NCBI RefSeq assembly: GCF_947568905.1
Contig: NC_079168.1
Coordinates: 33,728,001-33,792,000 of the forward strand
From: Ostrea edulis
Lineage: Eukaryota
Reading direction: 5' to 3'
DNA: 64,000 bases
The notes under the pieces are model-generated. The model worked only from the letters and a program-made list of their open reading frames with translations. It was not told the origin of the DNA and searched no databases. The position numbers and the translations under genes were made by a program. Positions 21,841 to 58,253 of this stretch are shown here, in pieces. Within the stretch, counting starts at the first letter, position 1, and every line of letters starts with the position of its first letter.

Positions 21841-22045
21841 CAGAAATGTTGTTAGGACTTACTATACTGATACAATTCCAAAGCAAGCCATGCAGTCACT
21901 TACAATCAGAAATGTTGTTAGGACTTAATATACTGATACAATTCCAAAGCAAGCCATGCATGCAGTCACCTACAATCAGAAATGTTGTTAGGAATTCATA
22001 CACTATACTGATACAATTCCAAAGCAAGCCATGCAGTCACCTACT
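21841..22045. repeat. Tandem repeat, about 66-bp unit, 3 copies
   Basis: cagaaatgttgttagga..ctatactgatacaattccaaagcaagccatgcagtcac repeated three times. Confidence 0.85.
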
Positions 22046-22112
22046 ACTATCTACAGTAGTTGAGCTGGAACCTTTGAATCATCCTTTATTTGTGGCATTT
22101 TGAATGAATATA

Positions 22113-22415: not shown

Positions 22416-23541
22416 TATATAGATTAAATTCAGTTCTTCTCCAGAAGGCTGAAATGGTTTTCTGGCTTCTGAGTGTTGTTACAGTCCTGAAATTCTAGCT
22501 GTTACACAGTGTACACTATTATTATTGTTGTTACATTCATGAAATTTATGATGAAGTGAGGTACATTTGAATAAATTCATGTGTATATGTAAACTGAAGG
22601 AAATTGTCTCCATGCATTCTCAGTGCCTGGCTTAATTGAATACATGAATGAAGTTAATCTCCAATTACCATACAAAATGACAAATTGTAAGTAGCAACTA
22701 ATTAGATGAATGGGGAAAGAGTATGTGTTTATAGGATGAAATAAGTCCTTGGTATATATACGTTAAATATAGAAAATTTCACATTCATTCCAAAGCACTT
22801 TTGCCATACTGCTCTTCCGTGGAATTTGAAAAAAAGCAGTTTGAAAATTTGAAAAACAACTTTTTGCATCCTTGTTTTTCAAATTCCAAAAATTGACTCA
22901 GAGCCATAAGGCTAAAGCATTTTGGAATATATGTGAAATCATGAACTGCATTCTCTCTTTCTCCCTTGTTCTCAAACTCGATGGTGCCAAGAAAAAAAAT
23001 TTGAAATATCCTAGGGTTTGGGATATTGCGGGTCAAATACCTAAAGAAAATGCAGTTTCAACTTCCAACCCATTTCAACATATCCATGGTATTCGAGATA
23101 TCGATGTTCAAGATACTTAAAATTCAACTGTATGTATACTTCAAGTTATGTATTTGGACTCTTGGCACTTTTTACATACAGAGACATTGTGGTTAAAAAA
23201 AAAGACAAAGCGAGGGAGTATAAAAGGGTATTTATCAATCTAAAATTACCTATATTTCTTAAAATGTTAGTCTTTTAGGTCTTTTAAAAGTGGATGGAAC
23301 CAGCAATGATTTACTGAGATATATATTTTATATTGCCCTGTGAGTAAAGAATATAATTTAATTGAAATGAAACAACAAAATTTGCAAATATTTGATTCGA
23401 TATACCATTATTTTAAATTTGTAATGTTTGTATTATATTTAACCATTTTATAGATATTGTATTGAATAAAATTTACCGTAGTTTTTCATGTATATAACTG
23501 CTTATTGTTTGATGTCATGAAAAAACTGCATGTCTAATAGA

Positions 23542-24365
23542 TTAAGGATGTATGATACACCAGAGAAATTTGATATGGATGAAAAATGGAGGATATTACA
23601 ACAATATTTTGAAATTGAAAACTTTCAAATTTACTTTATTTAGTCAAAAAATACAGTTTTAGTAGAAAGCAATCTGAAAAAAATTTAAAACCCCTGCTGG
23701 ACTCGAACCCATGCAGTCAATGTGCTAACCTACTGAGCTACTCAGTTAGACGATGATTTTTGAAATGAAAAGACAAATTACGTACATCTTCACAAGTCAA
23801 GGGTTATTGATTCGTTACGTCGCACTAACCCTTGACATCAGTCAGGGTTAGGGTATTGAGTTGGGCTCAGACTGATAAGTTCCACAACAGAGCGGGAACC
23901 AACGAGAATGCGGTTCTATTTTTAACAACGCGAATCGGCCAGAAATTAAAATAAAAACGTGTGTATTGATACCTACAGTTATGGCTATTTCAATCGTTTA
24001 AGCAATATTGTTTGAAACAAAAAAGGTTTCTAAACTTGATCTTAACTACCAATGAACGTAATTAGTGGTGTAAATATAACAATTCTGCGTGTTTATCAAT
24101 ACAGCAGTATGAGATCGCGTCATTTGTATCCATGTACAGCATAACAAGATGCAGTTATTTCATTGGATGTTTTATTTATAGTGGATTGCGTAATAGTCTA
24201 ATGAACCCAACTTTTATATAGCGACTGATGTCAAGGATTAGTGCGAGGTTCGAATCAATAACCTTTGGCTTGTGAAGATAAACAAACATTGCTGATATTT
24301 ATATTTTCATCATCCATGTTTTAAAAGGAAGTCGGCCATTATGATGATGTAGAGTACCTCCTTAA
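23542..24365. mobile_element. TTAA-flanked non-autonomous DNA element (Kolobok/piggyBac-like termini), interrupted by a nested MITE
   Basis: Starts ttaaggatgtatgatacaccagag, ends gatgtagagtacctccttaa; colinear with the uninterrupted copy at 27721-28041. Confidence 0.7.
23785..24280. mobile_element. MITE with about 58-bp TIRs nested in the TTAA element
   Basis: atcttcacaagtcaagggttattgattcg..gcactaacccttgacatcagtc / gactgatgtcaaggattagtgc..cgaatcaataacctttggcttgtgaagat; absent from the second host copy. Confidence 0.8.
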
Positions 24366-24730
24366 GGTATCGTCGTGTGCGGGTCTAATTTTTTTTCGTA
24401 TGGGGGTTGGGGGGTTGCAATTGGGTTAAATAGTTTCATAGTAAAGTCTACAACTGAACAGTGAAATCTACATTTAAAAAAAACATTTAACAAAAATAGT
24501 AATGTCGGTTAGGGTTGTCAAGGAGACGTGTCCCCACACCAAGTTAGCTAGGATTACAGTAATACATTTATATTACTAATTTTTTTCAGTGTCCTCAGCC
24601 AATGAAATTTTGGGTTATAAGTATATATAAATATTACTATTTTCTCTTTGTCTCTCATCTATCTCTCTCTCTCATCTATAAGTTAACAACATTTATTTGA
24701 GGAAATACTCACGGTAAGGGTTAGCTGCAA

Positions 24731-25522
24731 TAATGTAGCCCTCTCCGATTTTTTTGTGTGGGAGAGGTCTACAACTCCTTAGGATCTCTATAATGGTGCA
24801 AATGCGGGAGTGATTGACCCTCGCAACATTTTCGATCAGTCTAAACATTTGCTGACTTTCTTACGTAAATAAAATGATATTCTATGTTTCTTAGTCAATA
24901 CATAAATTTACAACCTGCAACTTACGATTTGTGAGGCTCTATTCTACCGTTTTTAAGAATTTCGATACATTCCAATTTCTTGATTCATATTTGTGCGCGA
25001 TGTTTGATGTACTGAAGTTTCAACTTCCGATTGTCAAGTTATTTGCATATGCAATACAAGGTAGTATTTACATCAATGGATGAGTATGGAGGTTAAAGCT
25101 ATTTCGTCGGTATTGAAAAGATTTAAATTTAATACCAAGTTAAAAAATGAACAGCAGAGTGTAAATTCTTTCTGCAACCATATGATTTTCCTTTCTTTGT
25201 CGGAATGGCTTGAGTAACTACATTTTCGCGCTGATTGTCAATGTTTAGATTTTTCGGTTGATCCACCTACGGGATCTTGCGATAACAAGCATGGCGGAGC
25301 AAATGAAGAATTTTGTGTGCTGTTCATGATGTTTAATGAATAATACCTTTATTAGACATGCCTGAACACAAAGTTGGTACTTCTTTTAGTGTATAAACAA
25401 CATAATACATGGAGCTTATTATCGGTTATTCATTAAATTATTTTGCACCATTGCGGAGATCCTATGGAATTGTTACGCCTTATCCGGAAAACGCCAGAAT
25501 AAAAAAAAATAGGGTAGTGCTA
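24731..25522. mobile_element. Degenerate TIR element (MITE/non-autonomous DNA transposon)
   Basis: Left tgtagc..acaactccttaggatctctataatggtgcaaa matches the reverse complement of right tttgcaccattgcggagatcctatggaattgt..gctaca. Confidence 0.6.
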
Positions 25523-26121
25523 CATAATTAGAGCTAGGTAAGGGTTAAGTTTTTTGCTCCAAATATTGTAAAAATACATACAAAAGTCTATTTCAAAGTT
25601 TTGCAGATGTAACATATCATTTATTTACAAATGATGTTGAATTCCTTAGTAAGTGTAACTGCAGGTGCTGAAAGTCTCTCGATCAAGCTGGGCTATTTTT
25701 AAGACTGTCATTACAATAAATTCATGAAGATGTGGACTAAGCAGTACTCTGATTTACCTAACAGAACACACGGGTTTCTAAATGAATTTTATAATAGCTT
25801 CCAGTGTTTGTAAGGGAATTAGATTTAGTTGGCAGACACCCATATGACCTTACATCTCTAACACCTTCCACATTGTTCTTTAGGGTTAATATTTAATGCA
25901 ATTTTGATTCTTTCAAATTGGGTTACTTCATTTCTGGTGCATGTATCATCTTTTGTGAACTTTCAAGGTCAATGGACATTGTTCAGCATCTGTCTAAAAT
26001 GCTTGCTTGTTTTTTTTTTTAATTTCAACAAATAAGTTTTGCATTATCTTTTGGTAGAGAGATTAAAGTGTCTGGAAATGAAGGGTGAGTGCCATTCCAA
26101 GGAGAAATGTAAAAAGAAATC

Positions 26122-26428
26122 AGCCATGCAATGTAGAACTAGTACTGAAGATAGGGCAAAACATTTTTAATATAAGCCATACAATTTAGAACTAGTACTC
26201 AAGATAGGGCAAAACATTTAATATAAGCCATACAATGTAGAACTAGTACTCAAGATAAGGCAAAACTTTTAATATAAGCCATACAATGTAGAACTAGTAC
26301 TCAAGATAGGGCAAAACTTTTAATATAAGCCATACAATGTAGAACTAGTACTCAAGATAGGGCAAAACATTTAATATCAGCCATACAATGTAGAACTAGT
26401 ACTCAAGAAAGGGCAAAACTTTTAATAA
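26122..26428. repeat. Minisatellite, about 51-bp unit, 6 copies
   Basis: gccatacaatgtagaactagtactcaagatagggcaaaacttttaatataa repeated. Confidence 0.93.
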
Positions 26429-26862
26429 TAAAAAAAACCCACAGTTCATATTTTTTTTATTTGAAACTCAATAAGTAATTTCCTTGTTAAAGCAGCATTT
26501 CCCAAACTTGTGAGGCTAAGAATTTAATGGACCCCTTCAGAGACTTGTACGGTCATGAGGTGAGGCTAAGAATTTACTGCAGAGACTTGTATGGTCATGA
26601 GGTTATTACTGAATGGACCCCAGAGATGGAATCCCTCTGTCCATGGACGAAATTTTGTCCAGAGATTTTCTCATCACAACTGATTGATTTTATTCAAGAC
26701 TTTTACCTCGTGAACCTGGTATTTACAGATTGATGCAATAAGTTAAAATATGGCTAACTTAAGAAATACTTTTTAAAGGTATCTCTAATTATTAGATAAA
26801 ATATTTTTAGGACTGACAGACAGTATAGACAATGGAAATGACTTAGTTGAAATAATATAGTA

Positions 26863-27455
26863 ATTATACCCTTTTTCATATTCCACCATAATTCAGTTTC
26901 CATTCATTATCTCTGCTATGGATGCACAAATTCATTTGAAATTAGGTATATTAAGATTATGAGAATATCCATGTCAAGTTCTTATTTAGTTTTGGTTGAA
27001 TAATTTTTGTGGAGTTGTGATACTTTATTAGACTTGAACTAAAACAATTCACAGTTTCCACTCATCTTTATCTCAGTCATAAATGGACATTTTGAATTGA
27101 AATTCAGGATATAGATATGTCACGTGTGTTACATGTATTAGGTTATAAGGAGAAGAACCCGTAAGCTAGCTGTATGAACTTGCTTCTGATCCCTTTGTAT
27201 ATATTATATACAATGAAATACCTTCAAATCAAATCAATGTCACAAGAATACACAGTTCAAGTTTTAAGTTAGGTCAGGTAATTTTTGGCAGAGTTATGCC
27301 CCTTGGAGAATGAAAAAAGTCAAACTACTCAGTTTTCACTCATTATCTCAGTCACACAAGGCCATATGGGATATAGAGATAATTATATGTATCATGAGAA
27401 TTGAGTACAGGTTCTCTCAGACAGCTTTTAGCAGAGTTATGGCCCTTGGGAAGAG
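26863..27455 (+). mobile_element. Degenerate Helentron/HINE-type element with satellite-like internal repeats
   Basis: Repeated cagtttccactcattatctc...gagttatg(g)cccttgg motifs, related to those at 33.8-34.1 kb. Confidence 0.55.
27124..27236 (+). mobile_element. 5'-truncated retroposon 3' end with (TCAAA)n tail and 7-bp TSD
   Basis: Ends aatgaaataccttcaaatcaaatca; flanked by atgtcac at 27117-27123 and 27237-27243. Confidence 0.6.
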
Positions 27456-27720
27456 GAATTTGTGATGCTCCATTGTAACGTTACACATCTAGTTTTATAC
27501 TGAATTTTTGAAGCTGCATTTTAGAAATCCAGAGATATAAGACTTGAATTATGCACAGAAAAACTAATGTGATGGAAATCAAAGGTTTTTATAAAGGGTA
27601 GATTTGTACCTCTCGGCAGGTCTTACCCTAAAAAATTTCCAGAGACTGAGAGTTGACAGATTTACTGCTAAACTAACAGATATATTATCAGATATCTTCA
27701 GTGGTGTCCATATGTTTATA

Positions 27721-28041
27721 TTAAGGAGGCATGCTACACCAGAGAAATTTGATGTAAATGAAAAGTGGAGGATACATGTATGTACAACAATATTTTGAAG
27801 TTGAAAAGTTTTAAATTTATGTTGTTAAAAGATTCAGTTTTAGTAGAAGATAATCTGGAAAAAAATTAAAACCCCTGCTGTACTCGAACCTGTGACCTAC
27901 AGTTCAGCAATTGGTATGCTAACCTGAGCTACGCGGCTAGGTAAATTGAAAAGAAAAAGTCAAATATTGCTGATATTGATTTTTTTCCTCCTTGTTTTTA
28001 AAGGAAGTCAGCCATTATGATGATGTAGAGTACCCCCTTAA
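27721..28041. mobile_element. TTAA-flanked non-autonomous DNA element (second, uninterrupted copy) carrying a tRNA-like segment
   Basis: ttaaggaggcatgctacacc ... gatgtagagtacccccttaa. Minus strand 27872-27938 reads agccgcgtagctcagg...ggttcgagtacagcagggg (A/B-box-like). Confidence 0.7.
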
Positions 28042-42033: not shown

Positions 42034-43003
42034 GTAAGACCTTGTTTCCAATGTTTGTCTTAGAGGGGTTGTTGTACCAGACTCTTTATGGGTGTCCTGA
42101 TAAGGAATTTTCTTGGTCATTTTGGGAGGATGCCTTGTAGGCTGTGGATAGTGAAACAAATTGATACCTCTAAAATTGATGGAAAAAATTGGTGAATACT
42201 ATTGCAGAATTGATGATTAAGTATTTCAATTTTCATCAGAGCACCAGGAAGAATTCAATTGAAGGGATTCACTCATTGTCATTTTTAGCTGTGAAGTAAA
42301 TTTAGATATGATAGATATCCAAGATGTGTAGTATATATTACTTTCATTCTCTTCTAGACAAGGTTAATTTCCTAGCATAGTGAAGATAAAATCAATTTGA
42401 TGAAAGATTTTTTTCTGTAATTGACAGAATAAAACAAAAGGTATTAAACAGCAACAGGCACATTGCTGTTACTTAATTTAAACATGTTTTCTCACTTTGT
42501 AATTGGCATTTAAAGAAAAAACATGGTTAAAATATTCTGTGTATTTTCATCCAAATGATAGTTTTATGGCTAATTTGTCAAACGGAGGGAATAAATTAAA
42601 AGAACTTAACAGATAGTGAATCACAGGGTAAATGATTTGGAATTGTCCTTGTTTGCTAATATTTTCACTTCCTTGACGTCCAAAAAACAAAGGAGTGAAA
42701 AGTCCACATGCATGTTACAAGACGTATGTCTGCATCAGACGGAAAGTAAGACTAGAATTACAACCAGTTTAGAATTTCAATGTCATGCAGCCATCTCAAG
42801 TGTTTTTGGACAAAATGTTTTGTATAACCTGTAAATTTCCAAAGAGTTTAAAGCAAATAAACATGTAACAAAGAAAATCAGTACTACATGTAGGTATATA
42901 TAATTGTAACATACTTCTATTTTGCTGAAACCATTAGTGGTATGGATTGAATCTCATGTGATGTTGTATTTGACCAATGTACGTCCTCTTTATGTACATG
43001 CAG

Positions 43004-43130
43004 GCAACCTGAGATGCATAAGTCTCAAGGTTTCGCGTGTGACTTCCAACTTTGCTTTTCTGCTATGGACCAACGTCAAATTTCCAGACCAGCGCAATTT
43101 GCTAAGCTATATTATCGTCTATAAAGAAGC
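43004..43130 (+). CDS. InR: InR FnIII-1 N-terminal exon, copy A (127 nt, phase 1-2); candidate mutually exclusive exon
   Basis: Acceptor tttatgtacatgcag, donor gtaagt. (C)NLRCISLKVSRVTSNFAFLLWTNVKFPDQRNLLSYIIVYKE(A), homologous to INSR CENELLKF...[25 protein letters not shown]. Confidence 0.9.
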
Positions 43131-43353
43131 GTAAGTGGAAAGTGGCAGACACCCCCAATATTTCTAGATCCATCCCCTCACCTTTTGTAGACTGATTTTA
43201 TTGTTACTTCATAGGCTTTTCCGTTTCAGTGATGTATTTTATTAGTGTATGATTGCCCCACCTTTTTATTCACCTGTGAGCTGTAGCTGTACAGTATATA
43301 TGTTTGCATGATGACCAAAGCTTATGTATGACCCCCGCTGTATTTCCACACAG

Positions 43354-43480
43354 GCACAGTGATGGCTCTGAACCTGACCGTAGTTAAAATAGCAGCACGG
43401 ATTGCTTTCCTTCGCTGGGATAACTTCAAAACTTCTGATCCACGGCAATTACTAAGCTATGTTATCAACTGGAAGGAAGC
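43354..43480 (+). CDS. InR: InR FnIII-1 N-terminal exon, copy B (127 nt, phase 1-2); candidate mutually exclusive exon
   Basis: Acceptor tatttccacacag, donor gtaagt. (C)TVMALNLTVVKIAARIAFLRWDNFKTSDPRQLLSYVINWKE(A); open frame, aligns ungapped to copy A. Confidence 0.9.
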
Positions 43481-45412
43481 GTAAGTAGATGGAACCTTGT
43501 TATAAGGCTGGATAAATCATGATGTGCAAGCTTATTGGATTAAAGTCATGTTTTAAGTCGGATAAAATTTGCATGTTTAAGATTGTAACCTACGACTGTG
43601 CAGGGTGTTGAACTGATATGTACCTGCAGCTGAAGTTGAACTAGCTAGTTCTCTAGCCTTTCCATGCATATATGTATCATTGCTATGGCCATGGGAATGT
43701 GAAATTATCCCAGATAAAAAGAGATTGCAGATTTTATATTTTATGGATTTTAAAGTGCTTTTTAGTTTAAATCAATTAGGAAGGTTTCATATGGGTTTTT
43801 TTTTTATGTCCATGTATGATAATATTCATCAATTTAGTGTAATTTTTCAGCCCAATTTTACAGCCCAATTTGCATTTTAGGCAGTAGAGATAGAATTTTT
43901 ATTTACCTGTAGACCTCTTCTTATCTTAAATTTTTTAGACAGATTTCCTTTGCTCTGATAACAGTTTTCTCCAATTTCATTGTGAAGCTGATGTATAGAT
44001 TGTAGAGGTGAAGTACACCTGATTGATTTTAAAGATGTTTTTATTTTTTATATGTATATATAGTGTAAAATAATAATGTAAAAAATGTTAAGTTGATGTC
44101 ATTTTAGACAGTGTCACATGCTAGAGTTATGGAAAGTAATTTCATATTCTGCAAGGTCAATACTTAATTGACATTTTCTTCAACAGGTGAAAATAAAACA
44201 CATTGTCAAGTTTTCCAAAATCAAATCTAATGAACATCGAAAGGTCTATTGTGATAGAATTATATTTGTTAGTGTAAATAGGGTACATTTTTTAATGAAA
44301 TGTACCAAAAAATTTTCAGGAGAAAAAAAAAAGATTAGTAAGAAACAGGGGGTGATAAGATAATATATGCAGGATGTGTAAATTGTGAGTTGCCTTATTT
44401 GTTGATTGATTAATGTCAGTATTATATGACTCCGTGTGAAGTCATTCTAGGAGGATTACATCATGTCTACACAGCGACTGGTACAGAAGGGTCTTTAGTG
44501 TGACCCTGATCCATCTAACTGCATGTTGTTGTTATTTTCCTGACATTAGACTCATCATTCAGAGTAATTCGTCTCCAGGGCCCGCGCATTATAGTTTTAT
44601 TACACTAATAATCAGAATGTTTGAGCAATATCTTTACAAAGCTTAAGATAGAAAGTCTGTTTGTTTTGAAGATATAAGATTGCTGTTGGATTTGTGCCAC
44701 ATTTAGTGTAAAAAGGTTGTTGTTACCCTTGTGATGATTTGAAATCCTTCAGAAAGATTATGTAAGAACATATCAGATGAAATGAGTCCCATTCCAGGTA
44801 ATGACAATGAGCAATACACACAGAATAACTGATGGCTGTTTATGTAATGTAAGTGGTATAGTACTGATAGAAATGAATTGTCACCAGTGAGCAGACAGGT
44901 GGTGTATATATTACAATTCTATCAACAGTTACAGTTGGGCAGCAGTTTTCAAGGGCCAGTCTTTTTAGTGGTTAGTGCCCTGGCTATCTGTCATTAGTGA
45001 AACTTCCTAAATATGGAGGCAATGCAAAATAGTATTAACAACTGTGTCCAACTTCTGGTGTTGTTCTGTGTGATGATGAAGGCTGTTCAATTAGCGAGGG
45101 AGGACCAATCGCCAAGGATACATGTAGATTATAAATAAGAAAATGTACAGGAACATAATGATACAACATGCATACTGCAATACAGCATTTATAAATAATC
45201 ACACCTTGTCCGCTAATGTATTTCAGAAGTGATTTATTTCAAGGTGATTTGGCTTTAAGAAACAGGTGGAATGTGTTGGTAGAACTGTAATTCTTTGTCT
45301 GATTGGCTAGAGGGAACAGTAGTTCATGCAATGATTTATTGATATTCTCTCTTGCACAGGAAGTTCCTGAGAGGAATGATGGGTTAAAATCAATCTGTTT
45401 TCTGTTTTGCAG

Positions 45413-45466: not shown

Positions 45467-46417
45467 GTAAGTTATTTTTTATATGTTTAATTTCAAAGTC
45501 TCAAAGTATGATGTCTTGTCTAAGATTTAGATGTTACAGAGTGTTCAAGATTTCCTATATCATTGCAATACAATGCTTTACATGCAGTTTTGAACTAACC
45601 CTGATTGTCATGGTAGCATTCGCTGTGCGAGCTGGGAGTCATGTATTAGTCTCGTCTGTGGTTCTGTGATTCTTGAAGGACCAATTAACCTATATAATTA
45701 TGTACATCCTGTGAATGGTCAAAACAAAAAATATATACATAAATGTTATAAATTTTTTAAAGAAACTGTTTTTAGAGACACAATTAGAGGTCCTTCAAAA
45801 TCTAACCAATACTGTACTGATAGCAATTTTTTTTTTACACAAGTCGCTGTCAATCCCAAAAAGGTCAAAGTTCACAGTTGTAATGTGATGCGTTGAAATC
45901 AGTTGGGATATGACGACTTGTAAATATTTTGTCTTAAAGGTATATTATATGCTGAAATTTGTATGAAAATGCTCATTTTCTATTGATTCTGGATGACCTT
46001 AACCTTTGACCTTGACCAGAATTTCAAGGTCAAAAGGTTTTGGATCACATTACAGTTTGTTCTGTCTCCATACAATGAATACTTTAGGAGTTGCCAATTT
46101 TTACATATAAATCATAAACTTTCAGGGGGTGTTAACTCCCTTTATGCATCAACAAACACCCGAAAGTAAGACTCGGTCTTTTTACCATAGACAGCTTATA
46201 AATTTCGTGAAATATCAAAAGGTCTATCCATAGAAAGGTGGAAAGACCTAAATAGTTTATTCTATACCTTTTTATGCATGATACCATCATGTCCCATGTA
46301 GGCTACCAGGTAAAGCTAGTCTTGATCAGATTTAGGTAACAGAATATGAATGGCCACACAACATACATGTGTTTATCACTGTCAGACAGCTTTAAAGCAC
46401 ATTTCCTTTACACTCAG

Positions 46418-48758: not shown

Positions 48759-49437
48759 TTTATACCCCCCGCAACAAGTTGGGGGGGGGGGTATACTGGA
48801 ATCGGGTTGTCCGTCTGTCTGACCGTCCGTCCGTCTGTAGATGCAATGGTTTCCGGGCTCTAAAGCATTATCCTTTCCACCTACAGTCACCATATCATAT
48901 ATATGGACTACCCATGGGATGAAGATGTTCCCTATCGATTTTGGGGTCAAAAGGTCAAAGGTCAAGCGCATTGGACATCGAAGTAGCAATATGGTTTCTG
49001 GGCTCTAAAGCGTTATCCTTTCCACCTACAGTCACCATATCATACATATGGACTACCCATGGGATGAAGATGTTCCCTATCGATTTTGGGGTCCAAAGGT
49101 CAATCGCACTGGACATCGAAGTAGCAATATGGTTTCCGGGCTCTAAAGCGTTATCCTTTCCACCTACAGTCACCATATCATACATATGGACTACCCATGG
49201 GATGAAGATGTTCCCTATCGATTTTGGGGTCCAAAGGTCACGTGCACTGGACATCAAAGTAGCAATATGGTTTCCATTTAAATTCTTTAATGGCTTTTTT
49301 CATCGCATGGAGATGCTGTGTTCCTAGATACTTTTTGGATCATAATACTGAAGTTTTACCTATTACCAACACCCTTTGGGAGATTGGGGTAAGCGGGGGG
49401 TATTCTTAGTGAGCATTGCTCACAGTACCTCTTGTTT
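48759..49437 (+). mobile_element. Complete HINE-type element with 138-bp internal tandem repeats
   Basis: tttatacccc start, (gtcc/gtct)n tract, about 3 x 138-bp units, ggggtatt subterminal inverted repeat, gtgagcattgctcac hairpin, cttgtt end. Confidence 0.85.
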
Positions 49438-49471: not shown

Positions 49472-49685
49472 CACTAGACAAATCAAGGGCACAGTCAGAT
49501 GATCTGTATGATGAGGAAGATGAATTTGAACAAGGTCGGGACATGAGTAGAGATTACAACAACAAAACAATTCAAGGAGAATGTGCGTGTCCAAAATCTA
49601 ATGAGGAGGAGGAGGAGGAAAGGAAGGAAAGAGAGATGCAGATTGCTTTTGAGAACTTCTTGCATAACTATGTCTACCTCAAGAG
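49472..49685 (+). CDS. InR: InR exon: insert domain alpha including alphaCT helix (214 nt, phase 1-2)
   Basis: Phase-compatible acceptor is atgtattgcag (49471); donor gtaaat at 49686. LDKSRAQ...GECACPKS...EREMQIAFENFLHNYVYLK(R). The 5' boundary is less certain than the 3'. Confidence 0.88.
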
Positions 49686-50965
49686 GTAAATAACGGCAGC
49701 ATGCTTATGTAGAATTCTTAACACTGACTAGGGAAAAATGGCAGAATTTGGCATTGTGTGACATGTGTAGATAAAAGTTTTCCCAGTCTCTCATTATCCC
49801 TGTATGTATTTACTCTGCGTGAAGTTTGAAGATTGAACTAGATTCAAAATATCTATGTCTTTGATTTAATTAAAGTTTTATTTATATAAACTTTACTAAG
49901 CATTATTCTCGCATTCTAAGTGTTTTTATTTACAATCATAGATTTAAATTGTCTGCCATTTCCTTAGGCGTAATATTGCCAAGAGAATGACTTGTATAAT
50001 CAGGAGAAAATATTACTAATGATTGGTGGGGGAGTTATAGAGCCCAGAGATTTAAATTGCATGGGGATTCGCCAACACTTGGTTTTAGAAATATGTTCAC
50101 GAAAGGAGATTTTTTATGTATGAATTGGAATGTCCATAGAAATGTGTATAGTGAAAATAAAATCAGTTTTCCTCCAGTTATTTTCTGTAAATATTGTAAA
50201 ACACACCGATAGCATGAACTATCAAATTTGCAAGTGTTATGAATTTTTTATCTTAAATGTTTCTTAAATGTTGTTCATTCCGTATTTTTTCTTCTTTCTT
50301 TTTATATTTTACTGGAATTGCTGCATTTAAATGTTATTTGACATTTCTGAGTACTATATATATATATATTATATATATATATGATATAGAAACTCAATCT
50401 TCCAGTTCATATGTCTTTTAAAAGGGGAAACCCGGCCATTATTTAGCATGCAGAAAGGAACATTGTATAGGGTTTTTATTTTACATCAATTTACCTCAAT
50501 TTTCATTGATGTTGTATGAAATCATGGTCATTCTCTCATGTTGAAGGGGGCCACTTGCACAAAACATCAAATACACATATTATTGTCTGAGCCACTTGCA
50601 AGAATATATGTTTCATGTTCGTCCAATAGATATTTTATCACTGCTGTATCACTCATTACATTAAGAAAATGCATCCATCATGCTTAAAAAAAAAAAACCA
50701 ACAAAACATAGAGAACAAAAGAGGGGAGATAATCCTCCCACTGAATTATACCATAAGTTAAGGAGAGTGTAAAACTCTGGGACGCTTATTTTCTAAACTG
50801 ACTAGGGGGGAGGGGGTTGAATGCTTGTTCTAATACTAAAGAATGTGTGTGTTAAGAGTGTTTACGTACCTGTCTGTGTTTTCTCCACTAACAATAATAC
50901 TGCAGGCCTCGCGTTGTATGTCGTTTCTTTTCCTAATGTTACAACTTCTTTGTTATCACATCTAG

Positions 50966-50980
50966 GCACAAACAAGATGG
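50966..50980 (+). CDS. InR: Candidate 15-nt cassette microexon after alphaCT, encoding (R)HKQD(G)
   Basis: Long pyrimidine tract with branch-like cctaat, tctag acceptor, perfect gg|gtaagt donor; 15 nt, phase 2-2, no stop. Confidence 0.6.
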
Positions 50981-51836
50981 GTAAGTAGAGTTGAAATGAA
51001 GCAGATTAAACAACAGTTTTCAAAACCATTTTTAAAAAGTCTGTATGAGTGATGCACCATCTGCATTTAAAAACTTAACTCTATTACATGAACGAAAACT
51101 CCTACCTCCAGGGAAAATTTTTGTGTTTCACTTAATGTAAATGTAGACTGCATCGTGTAATTTCTGAATTTATAATGAAAATCATAACAATGAAATCCTA
51201 CCAATTCTTTTTATATAACCACCATTTATATATCACTTGTTAAGTGCAGTGAGTTATGTTTAGTTTCTACTTTTAGTTTCATTTTTGTGTTTCACTTCTA
51301 CCAAAAAAACCTATTGTATTGTCTACTTTATAATTTTTCATATGTATCTTCATATCATATTTATTAAATGTTTGTATCGTATAGAACAAATCAACAAAAA
51401 TTTTCCCTCCACACATTCACTCATGGCATAACATTGAAGAGCTTGAAAAGATTTTTACTGGGAGATTGTGTTATACTTTCAATTTGCTGTTTGATGTGTT
51501 TCAGTTTTTTGAGGTAAAAGGGAATTTGATGTTAAAAAACTTTTGGCATGATAATACTTTGTCTCATTCTTATACTTTGATAATACTTTTTTCAGAGTAT
51601 TGCAAGGAAATTTTTTTTTGAAAAAAAGCTTTGTTCTTTCTTGGTATTGATTTTGTGAGCAGAATTTAAATGGAGTAAGAAATTACGTTAGTTTGGGGGG
51701 GAGGGGGTGTATTGTTCAATACATTCTTAAACAATGTCTTTTTCCCAGTAATCTTGACTTAAAAAGAATAAATATTTATGAGTATAGAAGATTTGTATTG
51801 TGCTATCTGACAATATTTACTATATATCTTTGGCAG

Positions 51837-51857
51837 AATATTAAGTACCTTTCGAAG
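51837..51857 (+). CDS. Candidate 21-nt cassette microexon, encoding (R)ILSTFR(R/S)
   Basis: Branch-like ctgac about 26 nt upstream, atctttggcag acceptor, ag|gtaata donor; 21 nt, phase 2-2, no stop. Confidence 0.3.
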
Positions 51858-52730
51858 GTAATAGTTTTTGACATGTGAAATGTCTATATAAATATATATA
51901 TATCTGGCACTATATAAATCTTTTAACTACAATTACAATTATAGCTCAAAATGTTGTGTGAAAAAAAAAGAAATGACACTTGATTAAAGTGTGTTGAAAA
52001 TGTTATGCTGTGATTGGATTCTTGGAGTTAAGTTAGAGCTAGTCCCAGGTCCTGAGGCAGATTGAAGTGACAATTGACCTAATGGTAAAAACAAGATTTT
52101 CTGTGAATGTGGAAATAACATGTGTTTCTTGTTTTATGAATGTGTATGGAGGAAAAGGGATGCACAATTCAATCAATATTCTTAAAAAGTTTGAGAATCT
52201 GAGTTTTTTCAGTAATTATCTTCGTACATGTTAGAAGAGGGGGAGGGTTTCAGAGGAGAGGAGGAGGGGTTTCAGAAAAGGAGGGGGGGGGGGGGGGTGA
52301 GGTGTTGAGAGAAGGGGGATGGTTTCAAAGGAGTGGGTCAGAGGAGGGGGAGGAGGTCTTCAAGATGTCAGATATTTTCTTGGAAAGAATGATGTAGGTT
52401 CAGTACTAAAGATACTGGAGTGGAAGGTGAAGGGTGGAGGTTGGTATAGATAATAGCTTGAAGTTAAGGATAGCACATTGTCCGGTTTGTCTTATCTTTA
52501 GATTATGGTTTTAGTCTCACAAGGGTTTTATGTAGCCATATTTTTTTTTCACTAAACAAGATTTAGATTTTAACATTTTGAATTGAATTTATTCCCCACT
52601 TTCCATTTTTAAGAAATTTCTGTGATCTGTTAGACCTTCTTAAATCCAATTGAATTGATTAAAAAATGATGTGGGACAGATATTAAGATATTTTTGATGG
52701 TGCTTCAAGGACATACTACATATTAAAAAG

Positions 52731-52975
52731 GTGGAAGAGCTAGAGGAGGGTGGGTGGGTATTAAACAGAATAGGTCAGGATGATAAACTATTACAGTGGA
52801 AGAGCTAGAGGGGTGGGTGGTTATTAAACAGAATAGGTCAGGATGATAAACTATTACAGTGGAAGAGCTAGAGGGGTGGGTGGTTATTAAACAGAATAGG
52901 TCAGGATGATAAACTATTACAGTGGAAGAGCTAGAGGAGGGTGAGTGGGTATTAAACAGAATAGGTTATGATGAG
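52731..52975. repeat. Minisatellite, 63-65 bp unit, about 4 copies
   Basis: gtggaagagctagagg..gtgggtggttattaaacagaataggtcaggatgataaactattaca repeated. Confidence 0.88.
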
Positions 52976-53158
52976 TACATTAAGTAGAGGGATCTTTGGG
53001 ATGGGGAAACATTATTTGTATGTAGTTTTTGGATGTGATTGAATTGTGCTGGCAGATACACCTATTGAGTGTGAGATATATGTAAATGTATTGTTTTGTT
53101 CAAAGTCTGGTGTTCATGTTAGATTTCTTCACCTCCTTCTCTTGATCTTCTATTAAAG

Positions 53159-53204
53159 GCCTGAAAAAAAATCCGTCTTGGATTTGCTAGATAGATATAT
53201 CTGA
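53159..53204 (+). CDS. Candidate alternative terminal exon, (R)PEKKSVLDLLDRYI*
   Basis: Strong pyrimidine tract ending in aag. Phase-2 reading continues alphaCT as LKRPEKK then stops; ATTAAA at 53421. No donor seen. Confidence 0.3.
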
Positions 53205-55727
53205 CGCCATCTTGGATTGCTACTTAGCTACCGGATGCAGTCTTCTGCTTCATGGCTTACATCTGCTGAACCTTCTCTGCTCTTTCATTGTCTTGTCCTG
53301 AGTCTGGTGTTGTCGTATTCCTGAGACCCAGCTCTTTGTCTCCCTGGATACCTGGGTTGCTATGTAGATCAATTGTCATTTAGGCTATACACTGTCCCCC
53401 CCTTTTTTTACAGGAAGAAAATTAAAGATGAATATTTTTTTTTAAAGTACTACATTGTGTATGATAAAACTATTTAAAACACTGTTATGTATTGTTATCA
53501 TGGTTCATTGTTGAACGTTACATCTGTCTTAACAAAACAAGGATTTTGTGTTAATAGATATGTATATTCTGTGTGCATACATTTCAGTGTCAAATTTGAA
53601 TATTTAATCAATGGGCCATGACGTATGATTACCATATGTAAATGAACTAGAGACACTTAGTAATCTCTGGGGTTTTTTTTATATCAAAGTATTCCACTGG
53701 TTACAGAAATTCAAATTTCAGCTTTAGTTGAACACGCACCTTCCCACACCCCCACCCCTGTCCTCAGTAATACGAAACAATTTGGATTTATGCTTTGTGT
53801 ATCTTGATATCAATGTATGTGTGTATTGTTTGTCCTTTCGCTGTAATCATATCGATTCCATGTTCTGATTGTCTTTTGTATAGAACTCATCTATTACTTT
53901 GTATTGTTAGAAAAAAACTACTTTAAAACAGAAGTGAAGAAAAACCAACCACATTATTATTGATAATTACATCTATGAAGCATCATTTCATGTGTCATGC
54001 TTATGCTTGTTCAGATCTTAATCAGCTGGTCCTCTGAGTTAATGGCCTTGTTATTAATATGTATACACAACGATGGAAGCTTCTGCTAAATTGTTCACAC
54101 TCGCACCAACCACCTAGAGAGTTATGCAAGCACATCCCCCATATCTCTTTTAACAATCTCAGCCAAGAAATGCATGAATTAAATTACACAGAATTGATTT
54201 AATTAATATGTGGTTTGTTTTTGCCTTTCCAACAGCTTATTTTTAACTTTGCAGACAATTTAAAAATTCTTTAGAAGCGAACATTTTGACAAATGTGATA
54301 TAAGAAATCTCGCCCAATAAGAAAAACTCGTCTGTATGGTTAGCACATTATCCTAGGCCAAACCACAAGTTAGTGTTTTCATTGTGAAATTGAATTATTC
54401 TTTTTCCAAAAGTACATTTTTCCAGGTATTTAAACAGAGAAGAATTCTACATAACAAATGCTGTAATATGTTTTGTTTTGGTGATTCATTGTCATCGTTT
54501 GTGATGTTGATGAACTGGTTCTGTGACCCTGTGCTATTTTAAAATTCTATAATGGTATCAGTATGGGAAATATCAAATAGAAAAGAATTCAATACAAGTT
54601 TCATTTTCAAATTAAGTTTCAATTGAATTAATTATATGAAAAGGTCAACATGTGAAAAACAGAATGGGTAATTAACACTGACATGGGATTTAAGGTGACA
54701 TGGACATGATTTGAGCTGAAAATGTTCAAATTTTAATGTTTAAAATGCTGAACTAAAGTATTACTAATGATCAGCCAAAATTTGAATGTCAGTAGTCAAG
54801 GTACATGGGAAATGCAGAGTTCACAAGTCCTTGTTATGTAAACATGGCTCATGCCTTGTTTTGTTTACATATAGGTTAAATAATCTAGTAAAAGTTTCGT
54901 TTAAAGCAGATTTTTTCAATTTATAAGTGAATTTGATAACACAATAAATTGTTTTCTGGTGTTTGGCACATCTCATTTTGTTTTAAACATGCTATTTTCT
55001 ATTAAACAGTCTAATGTAAACAAAAACATGGCACTAGTCTTATTTACATGACAAAGAATTGCAAGTGCTGTATCTCACTTATAACTCAACAACTGATATT
55101 CAATTTTGGTTGACCATTATGATTAGAAATACATGTACCTTAGGTAAGCATTGTAAACAATACTTCCAAGGTATGTGGGGTGGGGTTTGGGTACACAATT
55201 GAGCTGCTTGCAAGATTGGAGGGTAAAGAGAAGGATGGGGGGACTAGTGATCTGATTCAAAAACTTTTTGTCAAAAAAATTATTCCTGGATGTCAGTTGA
55301 TTCATTAATAAAAGCCTGTAATGTAGCGTGTGGACATTTTGTTGTGTTGTGTCGTTGCTGCTTCGTGTGTGGTACCCGTAACTTCATACATAAGAAATTT
55401 CATCATTATGTAGTGGATTCTATCTGATTTGTAAATCTGAATCATACTGTGTTGGCAAAACTCTTTATCAGTGAAATAAATGGTCGCACATCTTATTCTA
55501 TGAATCTTGCCAATATACAAAATATCAATGACTTTTCGGTGTTCATTTCCTATAAATTACCAGTAAATCATTACATGTCATCTGTTTGATTTTCAGTCTC
55601 AACAACATGCTCGTCGGTGTAATGCTTTAGTCTTTTATCGTGTTTTGTGATTTTGTGAAGTTTTTATAGTCAGCAACATTCTGCTGTAGTAATCACAAAT
55701 GGCTTGTATTGCTTAATATTACCACAG

Positions 55728-55793
55728 GGCAGATTACGGGCCCGGTCCCCCTAAAGGAATGCCGGAAATACCCACAGATTTACCCACAACATC
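55728..55793 (+). CDS. InR: Candidate 66-nt cassette exon, ADYGPGPPKGMPEIPTDLPTT(S)
   Basis: Acceptor ttaatattaccacag, donor tc|gtgagt; GC-rich island in AT-rich intron; 66 nt, phase 2-2, open frame. Confidence 0.6.
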
Positions 55794-56024
55794 GTGAGTT
55801 TGACCACATACCACCAACAATTTAAAGAGTCGGCCAACCATTTTTTGTAGCTAGTATAAAAATGCACCTCTGCCTATAATTGCCATCATCACTAATAATA
55901 TGCATCTTGCAGTATCTAAAAGATAATTTTCATACAAGACTTGCATGTTTTATAACAAGGTTTATCTGATAAATATGATAACACAGATGAACTTTTTTTT
56001 CACACTGATTGATAATGGCCTTTT

Positions 56025-56060
<36 letters not shown>

Positions 56061-57919
56061 CAAATTATTCTTCAGTGAAGAAAATTGAGACATTTAAAAA
56101 TTCATATTATTGATGTTGTATGCTTTTATAGAGAGGGGGCAAGATATTGTCCATAAATTTAGTCGCTTTCAGTGTATTTTTATGCAAGGGAAAACCCTGA
56201 ACTTTCTACAGTTACTGTTTTGCACATCAAAGAGCAAAAAATAAATAATACTTCCAATTTTGGATAAGTTTTATATTAGGTAGGTGCATTAAAAACAAAT
56301 TCTTGTTTTGGACTACCAAGGACTACCAAAAAAATATATATCAATAATCCCAATTTTTGGTAATTTTTATATCAGGTAGGTGCATCTTAAAAAGAAATTT
56401 CTTTTGGACTTAATCATTTTTTTTTCTATTTTCAAATGGGTTTTTAATTTCCTATATGCCATTTTAATATTGACATGCATGAAACAGGGCATGCATTATG
56501 GCTTGTTCCTATCAATGCACTCGAGGTATTGGCTTGCATGAATGAATATTTATTTGATTCTAAATACCAGAAGAATTAAGTCATGGATCCCACCAACATA
56601 AACAAATGTTGCATTTTATCCAGGAAATTCAGAATACCTCTATTGTTTACAAGGCTTTGTATGCACTCTTCACACTTGAAAATATATATGCTAGTCACAA
56701 TTTCCTCGTGCAGGGCTAGTAACCAGAGCGTACCGAAGTACTTTTTGTATATTTTTTTTGTGTCGAAGACGATTTTCTTCTTATATTTTAATAAGGTAAG
56801 GTAAGCATCAATATTACCATTCCTTGGCAGTTGATCAAACTTTCTACTTTTAAATAGCTGTAGATGCTTGCACATTTGCATATTATCATTCTTGAAAAAT
56901 CATCGAATAATCTGCTAAAAACTGACATCAATACTAGATATGTTCAAATATCATTTAGAACATCTTTGAAATTTTTCATCAAGTAGTGAATGACTTTTCA
57001 TGTTCCTTATGTCATCAAGAAGTTCATGTTCCTTTTGCCATCAAGAAATTCATGATTATGCTGTAATTTGTCGTGGTCAATTTCAGTGGCTCAAACAAAG
57101 ATGTTACCTTGCCGTTTTGTCCATGAACATATGAGAATTATTGGCAGTTCTGGCCAATTCCTTACAGTTGATCTTTTGTAGCTTTGATGATAGAACTGAA
57201 GCTTATACTCATCTCTTCAGCATGACTGTAGACCCCTACTTCATCCCCCCCCCCTTCTTACTTTTCCTTCCAGAATTGTGCATTAATCTATGAAGTTCAT
57301 ATTCCTGAACATGTGCTATTGTGAGGCCTAACTGAGTTTTCAGTGAACATATATATTAGATATTAGTACTTTGTTAACTCTTGTAGAATTATATATCTAT
57401 GCCTTTATGGTGTTTATTTAGACAGTCTGTTTTTGATATCTGACAGTATGTATGCATGTGAAAGTTTTTGGATTGCTGCACTTTTATTAACTTTAAAAAA
57501 AATGAAAGTGAACAGCAAAGAACATCATTGCTTATTTTCTTACAAAGAAAAGTGCAGACTCCAATTATTTTGAAATGCTTGATATATATCTTATACACAG
57601 TTTAATTTGACTTGCTATTTCTAAATTCACAGCACCAATTAATCACAATTGTTATTTATCCTGATTTCAGTTTAGCACTTCTTACTATTAACATGAGTGA
57701 TAATAACAGAAAAATTAATTTGTTTTTTAAGTTAGGCAAACACTGAATAAAGTTCATTAACTAATAGAAATGTAAAAGTCACTTTAATTCATTACCATGT
57801 TATAACATGAATTATTGGATTTGGTCATTTCAAGATGAAGTGAACTATAATTATACAAAGTTGTCATTGTAACAGTTACTTAAAGAGAATGTTTATTTTA
57901 TGGATGGTTCTTCTTATAG

Positions 57920-58253
57920 AATGGACAGTAAAAGAGCAGAGATGTTGTTTAAAAATAATCGCAAGATTGGTAACATCACCCTCTCCACTAAATTGCCAAA
58001 GGGACCAAGTGCCAAATTCCGAAAACCAAGAGCAGCTCGGTACAGTCGTGAGGCGTCCATGCAGTATAACTCCACCGCTCCGGGCGACCTAAAGGTTAAT
58101 CCGAATGATCCATTTGAAAATGAGACCAAGTCTGAGAACGAAACAGAGAAAGACCTGCCCTTCAATAAAGTTATTGTGCAGACACCATCACAGAGGAAGG
58201 ACATGAGTTACATCATCAGCAACCTTCAACATTACCAGGACTATAGAATAGAG
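57920..58253 (+). CDS. InR: InR exon: alpha/beta processing region, insert domain beta and start of FnIII-2b (phase 2-0)
   Basis: 3' end is secure (ISNLQHYQDYRIE|gtatgc, compare INSR LRHFTGYRIE). The 5' start uses ttcttcttatag, one of several phase-2 AGs, so it is uncertain. Contains RKPRAARYSR and several N-X-S/T sequons. Confidence 0.8.

What the first reader, a model, noticed from the sequence alone, without database searches (positions are those of the whole stretch)
49686..57919. Intron at the mammalian exon-11 position looks like a hotspot of optional exons, giving a combinatorial receptor code
Seen: the intron after alphaCT (…HNYVYLK-AG|, phase 2) contains at least three phase 2-2 frame-preserving exon candidates (15, 21, 66 nt) and one stop-containing candidate. 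Established: human INSR exon 11 (36 nt, phase 2-2) sits at this same junction and defines IR-A/IR-B ligand preference; C. elegans daf-2 has a cassette (daf-2c) and a truncated secreted form (DAF-2B) in the corresponding region. Inference: combined with the FnIII-1 A/B switch, both ligand-contacting modules outside L1 (FnIII-1 and the alphaCT tail) could be varied independently, producing many receptor isoforms from one gene, possibly by convergence with vertebrates.
Basis: partly seen in the sequence, partly recalled or inferred. Interest (0 to 1): 0.8.

Follow-up and report, generated by a model that had tools for sequence, protein, structure and literature searches.

The report
Optional mini-exons in oyster insulin receptor
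The flat oyster's insulin receptor gene has two small optional exons, at the spot where mammals make their two insulin receptor forms, so one gene makes four versions of the hormone-binding tail; gene databases already list them, but no paper found describes them.

Summary
The window is the Ostrea edulis insulin-like peptide receptor gene. The 8,234-nt phase-2 intron after the alphaCT exon holds two real, independently optional cassette exons: 15 nt (50966-50980, HKQDG) and 66 nt (55728-55793, ADYGPGPPKGMPEIPTDLPTTS).

- **Annotation:** Spliced window exons translate exactly into RefSeq isoforms X1-X4, covering all four combinations. The same two cassettes are the only coding differences among X1-X4 in Crassostrea virginica and two Saccostrea species.
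- **RNA:** Transcript contigs show the 15-nt-only and both-cassette forms.
- **Conservation:** The splice sites, the reading frame and about 600 nt of flanking intron are conserved across three oyster genera. The intron is about ten times more alignable than the gene's other introns. GCAUG, the RBFOX motif, is its most conserved pentamer.
- **Unsupported parts:** The 21-nt candidate is not conserved and appears in no isoform. No stop-containing exon or truncated receptor is shown.
- **Position:** The insertion point and phase match vertebrate INSR. The cassette peptides show no similarity to mammalian exon 11.
- **Other bivalves:** Mussels, scallops, pearl oysters and clams also carry short cassettes at this junction.

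The exons are already in RefSeq but undescribed in the searched literature. This is a new member of a known kind, and any effect on ligand binding is untested.

The parts
49472..49685 (+). Constitutive exon encoding the end of FnIII-2a and the alphaCT helix (...FENFLHNYVYLK-R). It ends in AG, phase 2.
   Evidence: Translation. Exact match to XP_056021824.1 and its sister isoforms. Aligns to human IR alphaCT TFEDYLHNVVFVPR.
49686..57919 (+). Phase-2 intron of 8,234 nt that hosts the optional exons. It is homologous in position and phase to the vertebrate INSR intron that holds mammalian exon 11.
   Evidence: Catfish INSR-a has the same junction...VFRIR with AG|gt. Mussel and scallop genes have the same phase-2 junction. 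It is 27%/44% alignable to C. virginica/S. echinata, against 3.0%/4.5% for the other introns pooled.
50966..50980 (+). 15-nt cassette microexon, phase 2-2. It adds HKQDG directly after alphaCT.
   Evidence: RefSeq isoforms X1, X3 and X5. 14 of 15 nt and both splice sites are identical in three genera. A transcript contig of a close relative reads alphaCT exon, then the 15-nt exon, then the downstream exon (run X1, loose end at 57919). Crassostrea transcript-derived proteins P0165, P0292, P0313 and P0166 include it.
55728..55793 (+). 66-nt cassette exon, phase 2-2. It adds ADYGPGPPKGMPEIPTDLPTTS, a Pro/Thr-rich stretch.
   Evidence: RefSeq isoforms X1, X2 and X5. Splice sites are conserved, and length differences between genera (66, 60, 57 and 54 nt) are all multiples of 3. 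In run X5, whose exon depth (~80) exceeds its intron depth (12-21), a contig ends exactly at 55793, while the DNA run X3 runs through. Transcript-derived P0319 carries both cassettes.
57920..58253 (+). Constitutive downstream exon: insert domain with the furin-type site (...RKPRAAR|YSRE) and the start of the beta subunit.
   Evidence: The X5 contig starts exactly at 57920, and the X1 and X2 transcript contigs align from 57919.
51837..51857 (+). 21-nt in-frame candidate. Not supported; probably a chance AG...GT open segment.
   Evidence: In no RefSeq isoform. Outside all blocks alignable to Crassostrea or Saccostrea. 388 such open segments occur in the intron.
49686..50539 (+). Conserved intronic block at the 5' end of the intron. 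It holds conserved GCAUG at 49699, 50059, 50212 and 50446.
50820..51467 (+). Conserved intronic block around the 15-nt exon.
   Evidence: 68-78% identity to C. virginica and S. echinata over about 650 nt.
55623..56209 (+). Conserved intronic block around the 66-nt exon, with conserved UGCAUG at 55942, 150 nt downstream of the exon.
56417..56567 (+). Conserved intronic island with two conserved UGCAUG (56476, 56535). Likely a splicing enhancer, not an exon.
57056..57919 (+). Conserved 3' part of the intron, with conserved GCAUG at 57220 and 57454.
49968..50025 (+). 58-nt exon-like segment with in-frame stops. Its acceptor-like sequence TTAAATTGTCTGCCATTTCCTTAG is identical in four oysters. Use in RNA is not shown.
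   Evidence: Length differences between genera are not multiples of 3, and the peptide is not conserved. Crassostrea transcripts L001 and L002 run through it unspliced.
57274..57320 (+). 47-nt exon-like segment with a stop and conserved AG and GT. Use in RNA is not shown.
   Evidence: The X5 contig covering 56068-57948 runs through it unbroken.

Best explanation
This is the Ostrea edulis insulin-like peptide receptor gene. The intron right after the alphaCT exon carries two cassette exons, of 15 nt and 66 nt. Each can be included or skipped on its own, so the gene yields four alpha-subunit tails: none, +HKQDG, +22 residues, or +27 residues. The extra residues sit between the ligand-contacting alphaCT helix and the furin cleavage site, at the residue where mammalian IR-B carries its 12 extra residues.

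Shown:
- the exons, the four annotated combinations and their conservation;
- RNA for the 15-nt-only and both-cassette forms;
- the shared intron position and phase with a vertebrate INSR.

Inferred from conservation: inclusion is controlled by large conserved intronic elements in which the RBFOX motif (U)GCAUG is the most strongly conserved word. With conserved sites 150-740 nt downstream of the 66-nt exon, RBFOX-type factors would promote its inclusion, as reported for daf-2 exon 11.5 and predicted for mammalian Insr exon 11.

Inferred by analogy only: the tails tune which insulin-like peptides bind, or how the receptor is processed or placed in the cell.

The 21-nt candidate is chance.
For: - **Gene identity:**
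- **Exact match to annotation:** window exons spliced in silico are exact substrings of RefSeq X1-X5.
- **Only coding differences:** the cassettes are the only differences among X1-X4 in O. edulis, C. virginica, S. echinata and S. cucullata.
- **Transcript contigs:** 15-nt only in Magallana, C. virginica and a close relative of O. edulis; both cassettes in P0319.
- **RNA-specific breaks:** contigs break at 55793 and 57920 only in run X5, whose exon depth exceeds its intron depth, not in the DNA run.
- **Exon conservation:** splice sites are conserved and the exon indels are multiples of 3.
- **Intron conservation:** 27-44% alignable, against 3-4.5% for the other introns.
- **RBFOX motif:** GCATG is conserved at 9 of 10 sites against a 16% background (P = 5.8e-7, top of 769 pentamers), while its reverse complement is conserved at 2 of 4. 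A second method ranks TGCAT first and GCATG second.
- **Position:** the insertion starts where human exon-11 residues start, and catfish INSR has the same phase-2 intron.
- **Published parallels:** RBFOX regulation of daf-2 exon 11.5 and a UGCAUG downstream of mammalian exon 11 (PMC4876481).
Against: - The 66-only and neither-cassette forms rest on RefSeq models, which I could not trace to reads.
- My single reads call could not span a junction into the 66-nt exon, and the listed joints did not include 55793>57920.
- There are no tissue or stage data, so regulated use is inferred from conservation only.
- GCAUG conservation was only weakly replicated in scallops (3 of 3, P = 0.012), and the mussel pair was too similar to test.
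- No conserved GCAUG lies within 500 nt downstream of the 15-nt exon.
- The cassette peptides are unlike mammalian exon 11, and nothing here measures ligand binding.
Confidence: 0.8

Rival explanations
1. The cassettes matter for processing, glycosylation or cellular placement of the receptor rather than for ligand choice. The Pro/Thr-rich 22-residue insert could be an O-glycosylated spacer before the furin site, or a sorting tag, as the daf-2c cassette is tied to an axonal receptor form.
For: The insert's composition...PEIPTDLPTTS, with a conserved DYGP. It lies about 35 residues upstream of the RxxR|YSRE cleavage site. PMC8752840 describes DAF-2c as an axonal isoform.
Against: Nothing tested here separates this from ligand tuning, and the two are not exclusive. 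The insert abuts the alphaCT helix, which contacts the hormone in human IR (alignment; established structure knowledge).
Confidence: 0.3
2. The main output of this intron is a truncated, secreted alpha-only decoy receptor (DAF-2B-like) or an NMD switch. It would arise by reading into the intron (AG|GTAA gives Arg-stop) or by using the conserved stop-containing exon-like segments.
For: - Crassostrea transcript contigs L001 and L002 are spliced upstream and then run more than 400 nt into this intron, giving a 753-aa product that ends ...YLKR*.
- A mussel-family contig, L010, splices alphaCT to the 12-nt cassette and then reads into the next intron, with a stop after one codon.
- Two exon-like segments with stops have conserved AG and GT.
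- PMC7041946 takes this EST signature as a hint of intronic polyadenylation.
Against: - The contigs end at different places and have no poly(A) tail.
- The only AATAAA in the conserved first 850 nt of the intron is not conserved.
- A stop right after a phase-2 GTAA donor is expected by chance.
- Run X5 has 15-25% intronic depth throughout, as pre-mRNA would give.
- No contig is spliced to either exon-like segment, and X5 runs through 57274-57320 unbroken.
- Four of the six contigs shown for the 753-aa product simply end at the exon boundary.
Confidence: 0.12
3. The cassettes are tolerated splicing noise that the annotation pipeline picked up, without function.
For: The 66-only and neither-cassette forms are known to me only from automatic RefSeq models. 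The inserts lie in a poorly conserved part of the receptor.
Against: - Exon sequence, splice sites and reading frame are kept across three oyster genera.
- The flanking intron is far more conserved than the other introns.
- The same four forms are annotated independently in four or more species.
- Assembled transcripts carry the cassettes.
Confidence: 0.04

Closest known systems
Mammalian INSR exon 11 (IR-A / IR-B)
   Same: A frame-preserving cassette in the phase-2 intron directly after the alphaCT codons. The extra residues start at the same aligned residue, after ...VPR in human and ...LKR in oyster. The intron position and phase are shared with a vertebrate INSR. A (U)GCAUG lies downstream of the cassette (PMC4876481 for mammals; here).
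   Different: Oysters have two independent cassettes (15 and 66 nt) instead of one of 36 nt, giving four forms rather than two. The peptides show no similarity (HKQDG and ADYGPGPPKG... against KTSSGTGAEDPR). The effect on ligand preference is untested. The 36-nt length and the phase of the human exon come from my own knowledge; I looked at no human DNA.
C. elegans daf-2 exon 11.5 (DAF-2c) and truncated DAF-2B
   Same: A cassette in a 'similar position' to mammalian exon 11, with RBFOX acting through a downstream UGCAUG (PMC4876481). Transcripts that read from the cassette region into the intron also exist in bivalves.
   Different: The worm cassette is one larger exon; PMC7041946 gives its exon 11.5 construct sequence, stop codon included, as 292 bp. 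DAF-2B is a demonstrated secreted product, whereas a truncated bivalve form is not shown here.
Cassettes at the same junction in other bivalve insulin receptor genes (database isoforms only)
   Same: All lie in the same phase-2 intron.
- Mytilus: 21, 12 and 36 nt, in at least six combinations.
- Scallops: 12-15 nt, about 1.1 kb into the intron.
- Pinctada fucata cDNA: +DTDKSG.
- Sinonovacula: +RNDQS.
- Dreissena: +MEEEPEKC.
- Mya: RNKKEGSNC or MEDVPKKC.
   Different: The peptides are not recognisably alike between orders, so I cannot say whether there was one origin or several.

Membership tests
Insulin receptor family gene (IR / IGF1R / invertebrate ILP receptor) | L1, Cys-rich, L2 and FnIII ectodomain with an alphaCT motif, then a transmembrane segment and a tyrosine kinase | tested here: met
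   Window exons match XP_056021821-25, O. edulis insulin-like peptide receptor, whose cluster representative carries Recep_L, Furin-like, fn3 and PK_Tyr Pfam domains. The region aligns to human IR in the PDB, E = 5e-23. The kinase exons lie beyond the window.
INSR exon-11-type cassette (IR-A/IR-B kind) | The cassette lies in the intron immediately after the alphaCT codons, at the same position and phase | tested here: met
   The oyster exon ends ...YLK-AG|gt. The human IR-B insert begins at the same aligned residue. The catfish INSR-a exon ends ...FRI-AG|gt, with the next exon starting G CCA....
INSR exon-11-type cassette (IR-A/IR-B kind) | A frame-preserving exon that is either included or skipped in mature mRNA | tested here: met
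   The cassettes are 15 and 66 nt. All four combinations are exact matches to RefSeq isoforms. Transcript contigs carry the 15-nt exon alone or both cassettes.
INSR exon-11-type cassette (IR-A/IR-B kind) | Descent from the mammalian exon, shown by peptide similarity | tested here: not met
   HMMER aligns HKQDGAD to KTSSGTG with no identities. The cassette is analogous to the mammalian exon, not orthologous.
INSR exon-11-type cassette (IR-A/IR-B kind) | The isoforms differ in ligand affinity or selectivity | not testable with these tools
   Needs binding assays with oyster insulin-like peptides.
RBFOX-regulated alternative exon | Conserved (U)GCAUG in the flanking introns, especially downstream of the exon | tested here: met
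   GCATG is conserved at 9 of 10 sites in three genera, P = 5.8e-7, the top pentamer, and the conservation is strand-specific. A second method confirms it. UGCAUG lies at +150, +684 and +743 from the 66-nt exon. There is none within 500 nt downstream of the 15-nt exon.
RBFOX-regulated alternative exon | Inclusion changes with RBFOX level or with mutation of the motif | not testable with these tools
   Needs minigenes or knock-down.
DAF-2B-type truncated decoy receptor | A polyadenylated transcript that ends in the intron and encodes a secreted alpha-only product | tested here: inconclusive
   Intron-reading transcripts exist. They have no poly(A) tail and different ends, the only AATAAA in the first 850 nt is not conserved, and X5 has general intronic depth.
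Neural microexon programme (SRRM3/4, eMIC) | A UGC motif close upstream of the 3' splice site, and neural-specific inclusion | tested here: inconclusive
   By eye, there is no UGC in the 30 nt before the 15-nt exon, and one UGC about 18 nt before the 66-nt exon. There are no tissue data.

The most novel reading that the evidence does not exclude
Short optional exons directly after alphaCT are a feature of bivalve insulin receptors as a whole: oysters, pearl oysters, scallops, mussels, arks and heterodont clams. They would be run by the same RBFOX-type intronic code that acts on the nematode and mammalian receptor cassettes. An insulin-receptor tail switch under RBFOX control would then be either an ancestral bilaterian module or a case of evolution hitting the same intron at least three times. 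Mussels would reach up to eight tail variants from three cassettes.
Probability: 0.35. Interest if true: 0.75.

Novelty: new member of a known kind. Interest (0 to 1): 0.6.

Why it matters
Splice forms of the insulin receptor that differ just after alphaCT underlie the IR-A/IR-B difference in mammals, and they were long held to be a mammalian invention. A 2025 survey (PMC12796670) extended the insert only to turtles.

Their conservation points to function, and the conserved intronic code matches the factor (RBFOX) implicated in worms and mammals. Database isoforms suggest the same holds across bivalves.

That turns 'why does the receptor tail vary?' into a comparative question that can be tested in animals with many insulin-like peptides and one receptor. 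It also bears on growth and reproduction traits in farmed oysters. The exons themselves are already in RefSeq models, so the gain is in interpretation, not in finding new sequence.

Tried and rejected
- **Splice-site scoring:** a simple weight matrix over all AG...GT pairs did not discriminate. The real acceptors scored -1.4 and 2.1, and only 15 pairs passed both cut-offs.
- **Long-range RNA pairing:** a search for inverted repeats between the conserved blocks found only A/T-rich, low-complexity matches.
- **Truncated mussel-like protein P0003:** the 737-aa protein turned out to be a partly spliced transcript, not a dedicated terminal exon.
- **The 753-aa product P0318:** four of the six contigs shown just end at the exon boundary, and two read into the intron.
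- **GCAUG test in mussels:** M. galloprovincialis against M. californianus has a 59% background conservation, so the test had no power.
- **Enrichment against shuffles:** GCATG is about 3-fold enriched in all four introns, but so is its reverse complement in two of them. I therefore rely on conservation, not enrichment.
- **Literature:** five full-text searches (two on oyster or bivalve receptor isoforms, one on molluscs and exon 11, one on daf-2c) found no paper describing mollusc receptor cassettes.
- **M. gigas genomic locus:** look-up with isoform X2 found nothing on record.
- it allowed one call of at most 6,000 nt. The alphaCT exon and the 66-nt exon are 6,043 nt apart, so I chose 52254-58253.
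- **Unused:** the second run search.


Full report
**What the window is.** ORFs along the + strand encode L1, Cys-rich, L2, FnIII and transmembrane pieces of an insulin-type receptor. A search with the L1 exon, followed by a word search, led to oyster receptors. The peptide across the junction in question is identical to Ostrea edulis 'insulin-like peptide receptor isoform X4', XP_056021824.1. The window is therefore that gene, from the L1 exon to just past the transmembrane exon.

**The observation.**
- The alphaCT exon ends ...TTC TTG CAT AAC TAT GTC TAC CTC AAG AG|GTAAAT at 49685, and the next constitutive exon starts at 57920. The exon really begins at 49472, not at the upstream AG.
- The three in-frame candidates sit at 50966-50980, 51837-51857 and 55728-55793.
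- As bare sequence features they prove little. The intron has 388 AG...GT segments (9-300 nt, length a multiple of 3) that stay open in phase 2-2. A weight-matrix score does not pick out real sites here.

**Two of the three are real exons.**
- The 90% cluster of the O. edulis protein holds five RefSeq isoforms.
- Window exons spliced in silico and translated are exact substrings of X1 and X5 (15 + 66), X2 (66 only), X3 (15 only) and X4 (neither). The 21-nt segment, alone or with the 15-nt exon, matches none.
- X1-X4 differ in nothing else. X5 differs from X1 only by lacking the first 43 residues, which include the signal peptide.
- In Crassostrea virginica, Saccostrea echinata and S. cucullata, the annotated X1-X4 again differ only by these two cassettes. 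Magallana gigas and M. angulata show the same cassettes.
- Proteins called on short transcript-like contigs (about 4.7-9 kb, full-length spliced ORFs) carry the 15-nt cassette alone (P0165, P0313, P0166, P0292) or both cassettes (P0319).

- Run X3 is DNA, with flat depth of about 30 and contigs that run through the splice sites.
- Run X5, same organism, has about 80-fold depth on the exon against 12-21 on the intron. One of its contigs ends exactly at 55793 and another starts exactly at 57920. These are branch points at the two splice sites that the DNA run lacks.
- Runs X1 and X2 come from a close relative, about 2% divergent in the exon. Their exon depth is 84 and 40, with only scraps of intron.
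- The X1 transcript contig (4,133 nt) has, before 57919, the loose end ...ATGTCTACCTTAAGAG GCACAAACAAGATG. That reads alphaCT exon, then the 15-nt exon, then the downstream exon, with the 66-nt exon skipped.
- The listed joints did not include 55793>57920, and 20 joints were not shown. Direct read support for 66-nt inclusion in O. edulis is therefore only the branch point.

**Conservation.** I fetched the orthologous loci of C. virginica (L007), S. echinata (L008) and Mytilus galloprovincialis (L009).
- The 15-nt exon is identical in 14 of 15 nt, with AG and GTAAGT kept.
- The 66-nt exon keeps AG and GTGAGT. Its length differences (66, 60, 57 and 54 nt) are all multiples of three, whereas the flanking intron has 1- and 2-nt indels.
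- About 600 nt around each cassette, the first 850 nt and the last 860 nt of the intron align between genera.
- Overall the intron is 27% and 44% alignable to Crassostrea and Saccostrea, against 3.0% and 4.5% for the other introns of the window pooled.
- The 21-nt candidate falls in an unalignable stretch.

**What the conserved intron says about control.**
- In the three-genus alignment of the conserved blocks, GCATG is the most significantly conserved of 769 pentamers. It is conserved at 9 of 10 sites against a 16% background, P = 5.8e-7. TGCAT comes second, and TGCATG is conserved at 5 of 5 sites. The reverse complement CATGC is conserved at 2 of 4.
- A second method based on pairwise BLAST chains gives TGCAT 8 of 9 (rank 1) and GCATG 6 of 7 (rank 2).
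- The conserved sites are at 49699, 14 nt past the alphaCT donor; at 50059, 50212 and 50446; at 55943, 56477 and 56536, downstream of the 66-nt exon; and at 57220 and 57454.
- (U)GCAUG is the RBFOX binding motif. PMC4876481 shows that RBFOX proteins drive daf-2 exon 11.5 inclusion through downstream UGCAUG. It also notes the same motif downstream of exon 11 in human and mouse.
- In scallops the motif is conserved at 3 of 3 sites (P = 0.012, rank 6), which is weak. The two mussels available are too similar to test.
- Regulation by RBFOX is an inference from these data, not a result.

**Same place as mammalian exon 11.**
- HMMER aligns oyster ...AFENFLHNYVYLKR|HKQDGAD to human long-isoform ...TFEDYLHNVVFVPR|KTSSGTG. 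The oyster inserts thus begin at the residue where the exon-11 residues begin. The inserted residues are not alike.
- In the catfish INSR-a locus the exon ends ...GTG TTC CGT ATC AG|gtactg and the next starts cag|G CCA CGT. That is the same position and phase as the oyster. Mussels and scallops share it too.
- The intron is therefore shared and old, while the exons inside it are lineage-specific.
- I looked at no human DNA. The length and phase of the human exon are from my own knowledge.

**Beyond oysters.** Isoforms in the same protein clusters show short cassettes at this junction in other bivalves.
- Mytilus: CSPTSI-R (21 nt), DQY-R (12 nt) and KDKSKRRPRQAI (36 nt), all phase 2-2 in L009, in at least six combinations.
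- Scallops: E(K)MRG, a 12-15-nt exon about 1.1 kb into a 13-16-kb intron.
- Pinctada fucata cDNA: +DTDKSG.
- Sinonovacula: +RNDQS.
- Dreissena: +MEEEPEKC.
- Mya: RNKKEGSNC or MEDVPKKC.
- Ark shells also vary here.
- Annotated isoforms of a nemertean, a chiton, abalone, limpets, cuttlefish, amphioxus, Daphnia, a spider and scorpions do not vary here. Two Pomacea gene models differ at the junction, but they are rival predictions rather than isoforms.
- This is annotation-level evidence. Absence in those groups is weak.

**Truncated or poison forms.**
- Reading into the intron gives Arg-stop (AGG TAA). Crassostrea contigs L001 and L002 do this after correct upstream splicing.
- A mussel-family contig splices to the 12-nt cassette and then reads on into the next intron.
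- PMC7041946 treats such ESTs as hints of intronic polyadenylation, which is how DAF-2B arises.
- Here, though, the contigs end at different points without poly(A). The only AATAAA in the conserved 5' block is not conserved. Run X5 shows general pre-mRNA depth.
- Two exon-like segments with stops (49968-50025 and 57274-57320) have conserved AG and GT. Their lengths vary out of frame and the peptide is not conserved, and no contig is spliced to them.
- I keep a decoy or NMD role as a minor rival.

**The combinatorial claim.** Four tails are supported in oysters. The proposed multiplication with a FnIII-1 A/B switch is not. No annotated isoform differs in FnIII-1, and the earlier follow-up on that finding saw no RNA using the spare copy (s1-287382).

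**Novelty.** The exons are already in RefSeq models for at least six oyster species. Five full-text searches found no paper that describes them, or any mollusc receptor cassette. A 2025 survey still treats the alphaCT insert as mammalian plus turtles and analysed no mollusc receptors. I file this as a new member of a known kind: an insulin-receptor tail cassette, here doubled and apparently bivalve-wide.

Noticed in passing
window 54654-55253: A very high-copy repeat: summed depth of 30,000-60,000 in the DNA run against about 30 for its flanks, with many 'opposite strands' joints. It is probably a small transposable element with inverted ends.
   Followed up: no
window 52731-52974; 56236-56410; 56026-56057: A 63-nt tandem repeat (3.8 copies, 95% matches), a 96-nt repeat (1.8 copies) and a 32-nt poly(A) run inside the intron. 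None of them is conserved in other oysters.
   Followed up: partly
window 49968-50025 and 57274-57320: Two exon-like segments with in-frame stops whose AG and GT are conserved in three oyster genera. The acceptor-like 24-mer before 49968 is identical in four oysters. They could be decoy splice sites, poison exons or protein-binding elements.
   Followed up: partly
L009:44564-44584, 45467-45478, 49214-49249 (Mytilus galloprovincialis): Three phase 2-2 cassettes (21, 12 and 36 nt) in the homologous mussel intron. RefSeq lists at least six combinations across Mytilus species.
   Followed up: partly
P0351, P0160, P0348 (Mya arenaria, Dreissena polymorpha): Heterodont clam cassettes at this junction end in a cysteine (MEEEPEKC, MEDVPKKC, RNKKEGSNC). 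In Mya the two appear as alternatives to each other. An extra Cys next to alphaCT could change disulfide bonding.
   Followed up: no
P0152, P0154, P0157, P0160 (Ruditapes, Mactra, Dreissena, Mya): Heterodont bivalve receptors are 1,800-2,190 residues long and carry SRCR-type Pfam domains (PF00530, PF15494) besides the usual receptor domains. In Dreissena and Mya the alphaCT motif sits near residue 1,400, so the extra length lies N-terminal.
   Followed up: no
P0272 (O. edulis isoform X5); window 19802: RefSeq isoform X5 starts at the Met of the L1 exon and lacks the 43-residue signal-peptide exon. It is either an alternative 5' end or a model artefact.
   Followed up: partly
window 20372-34459 and 42045-43355: Other conserved non-exonic islands in the gene (for example 30546-31006 and 31963-32100) and a well-conserved stretch, 42957-43487, that spans the two FnIII-1 exon copies.
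   Followed up: no
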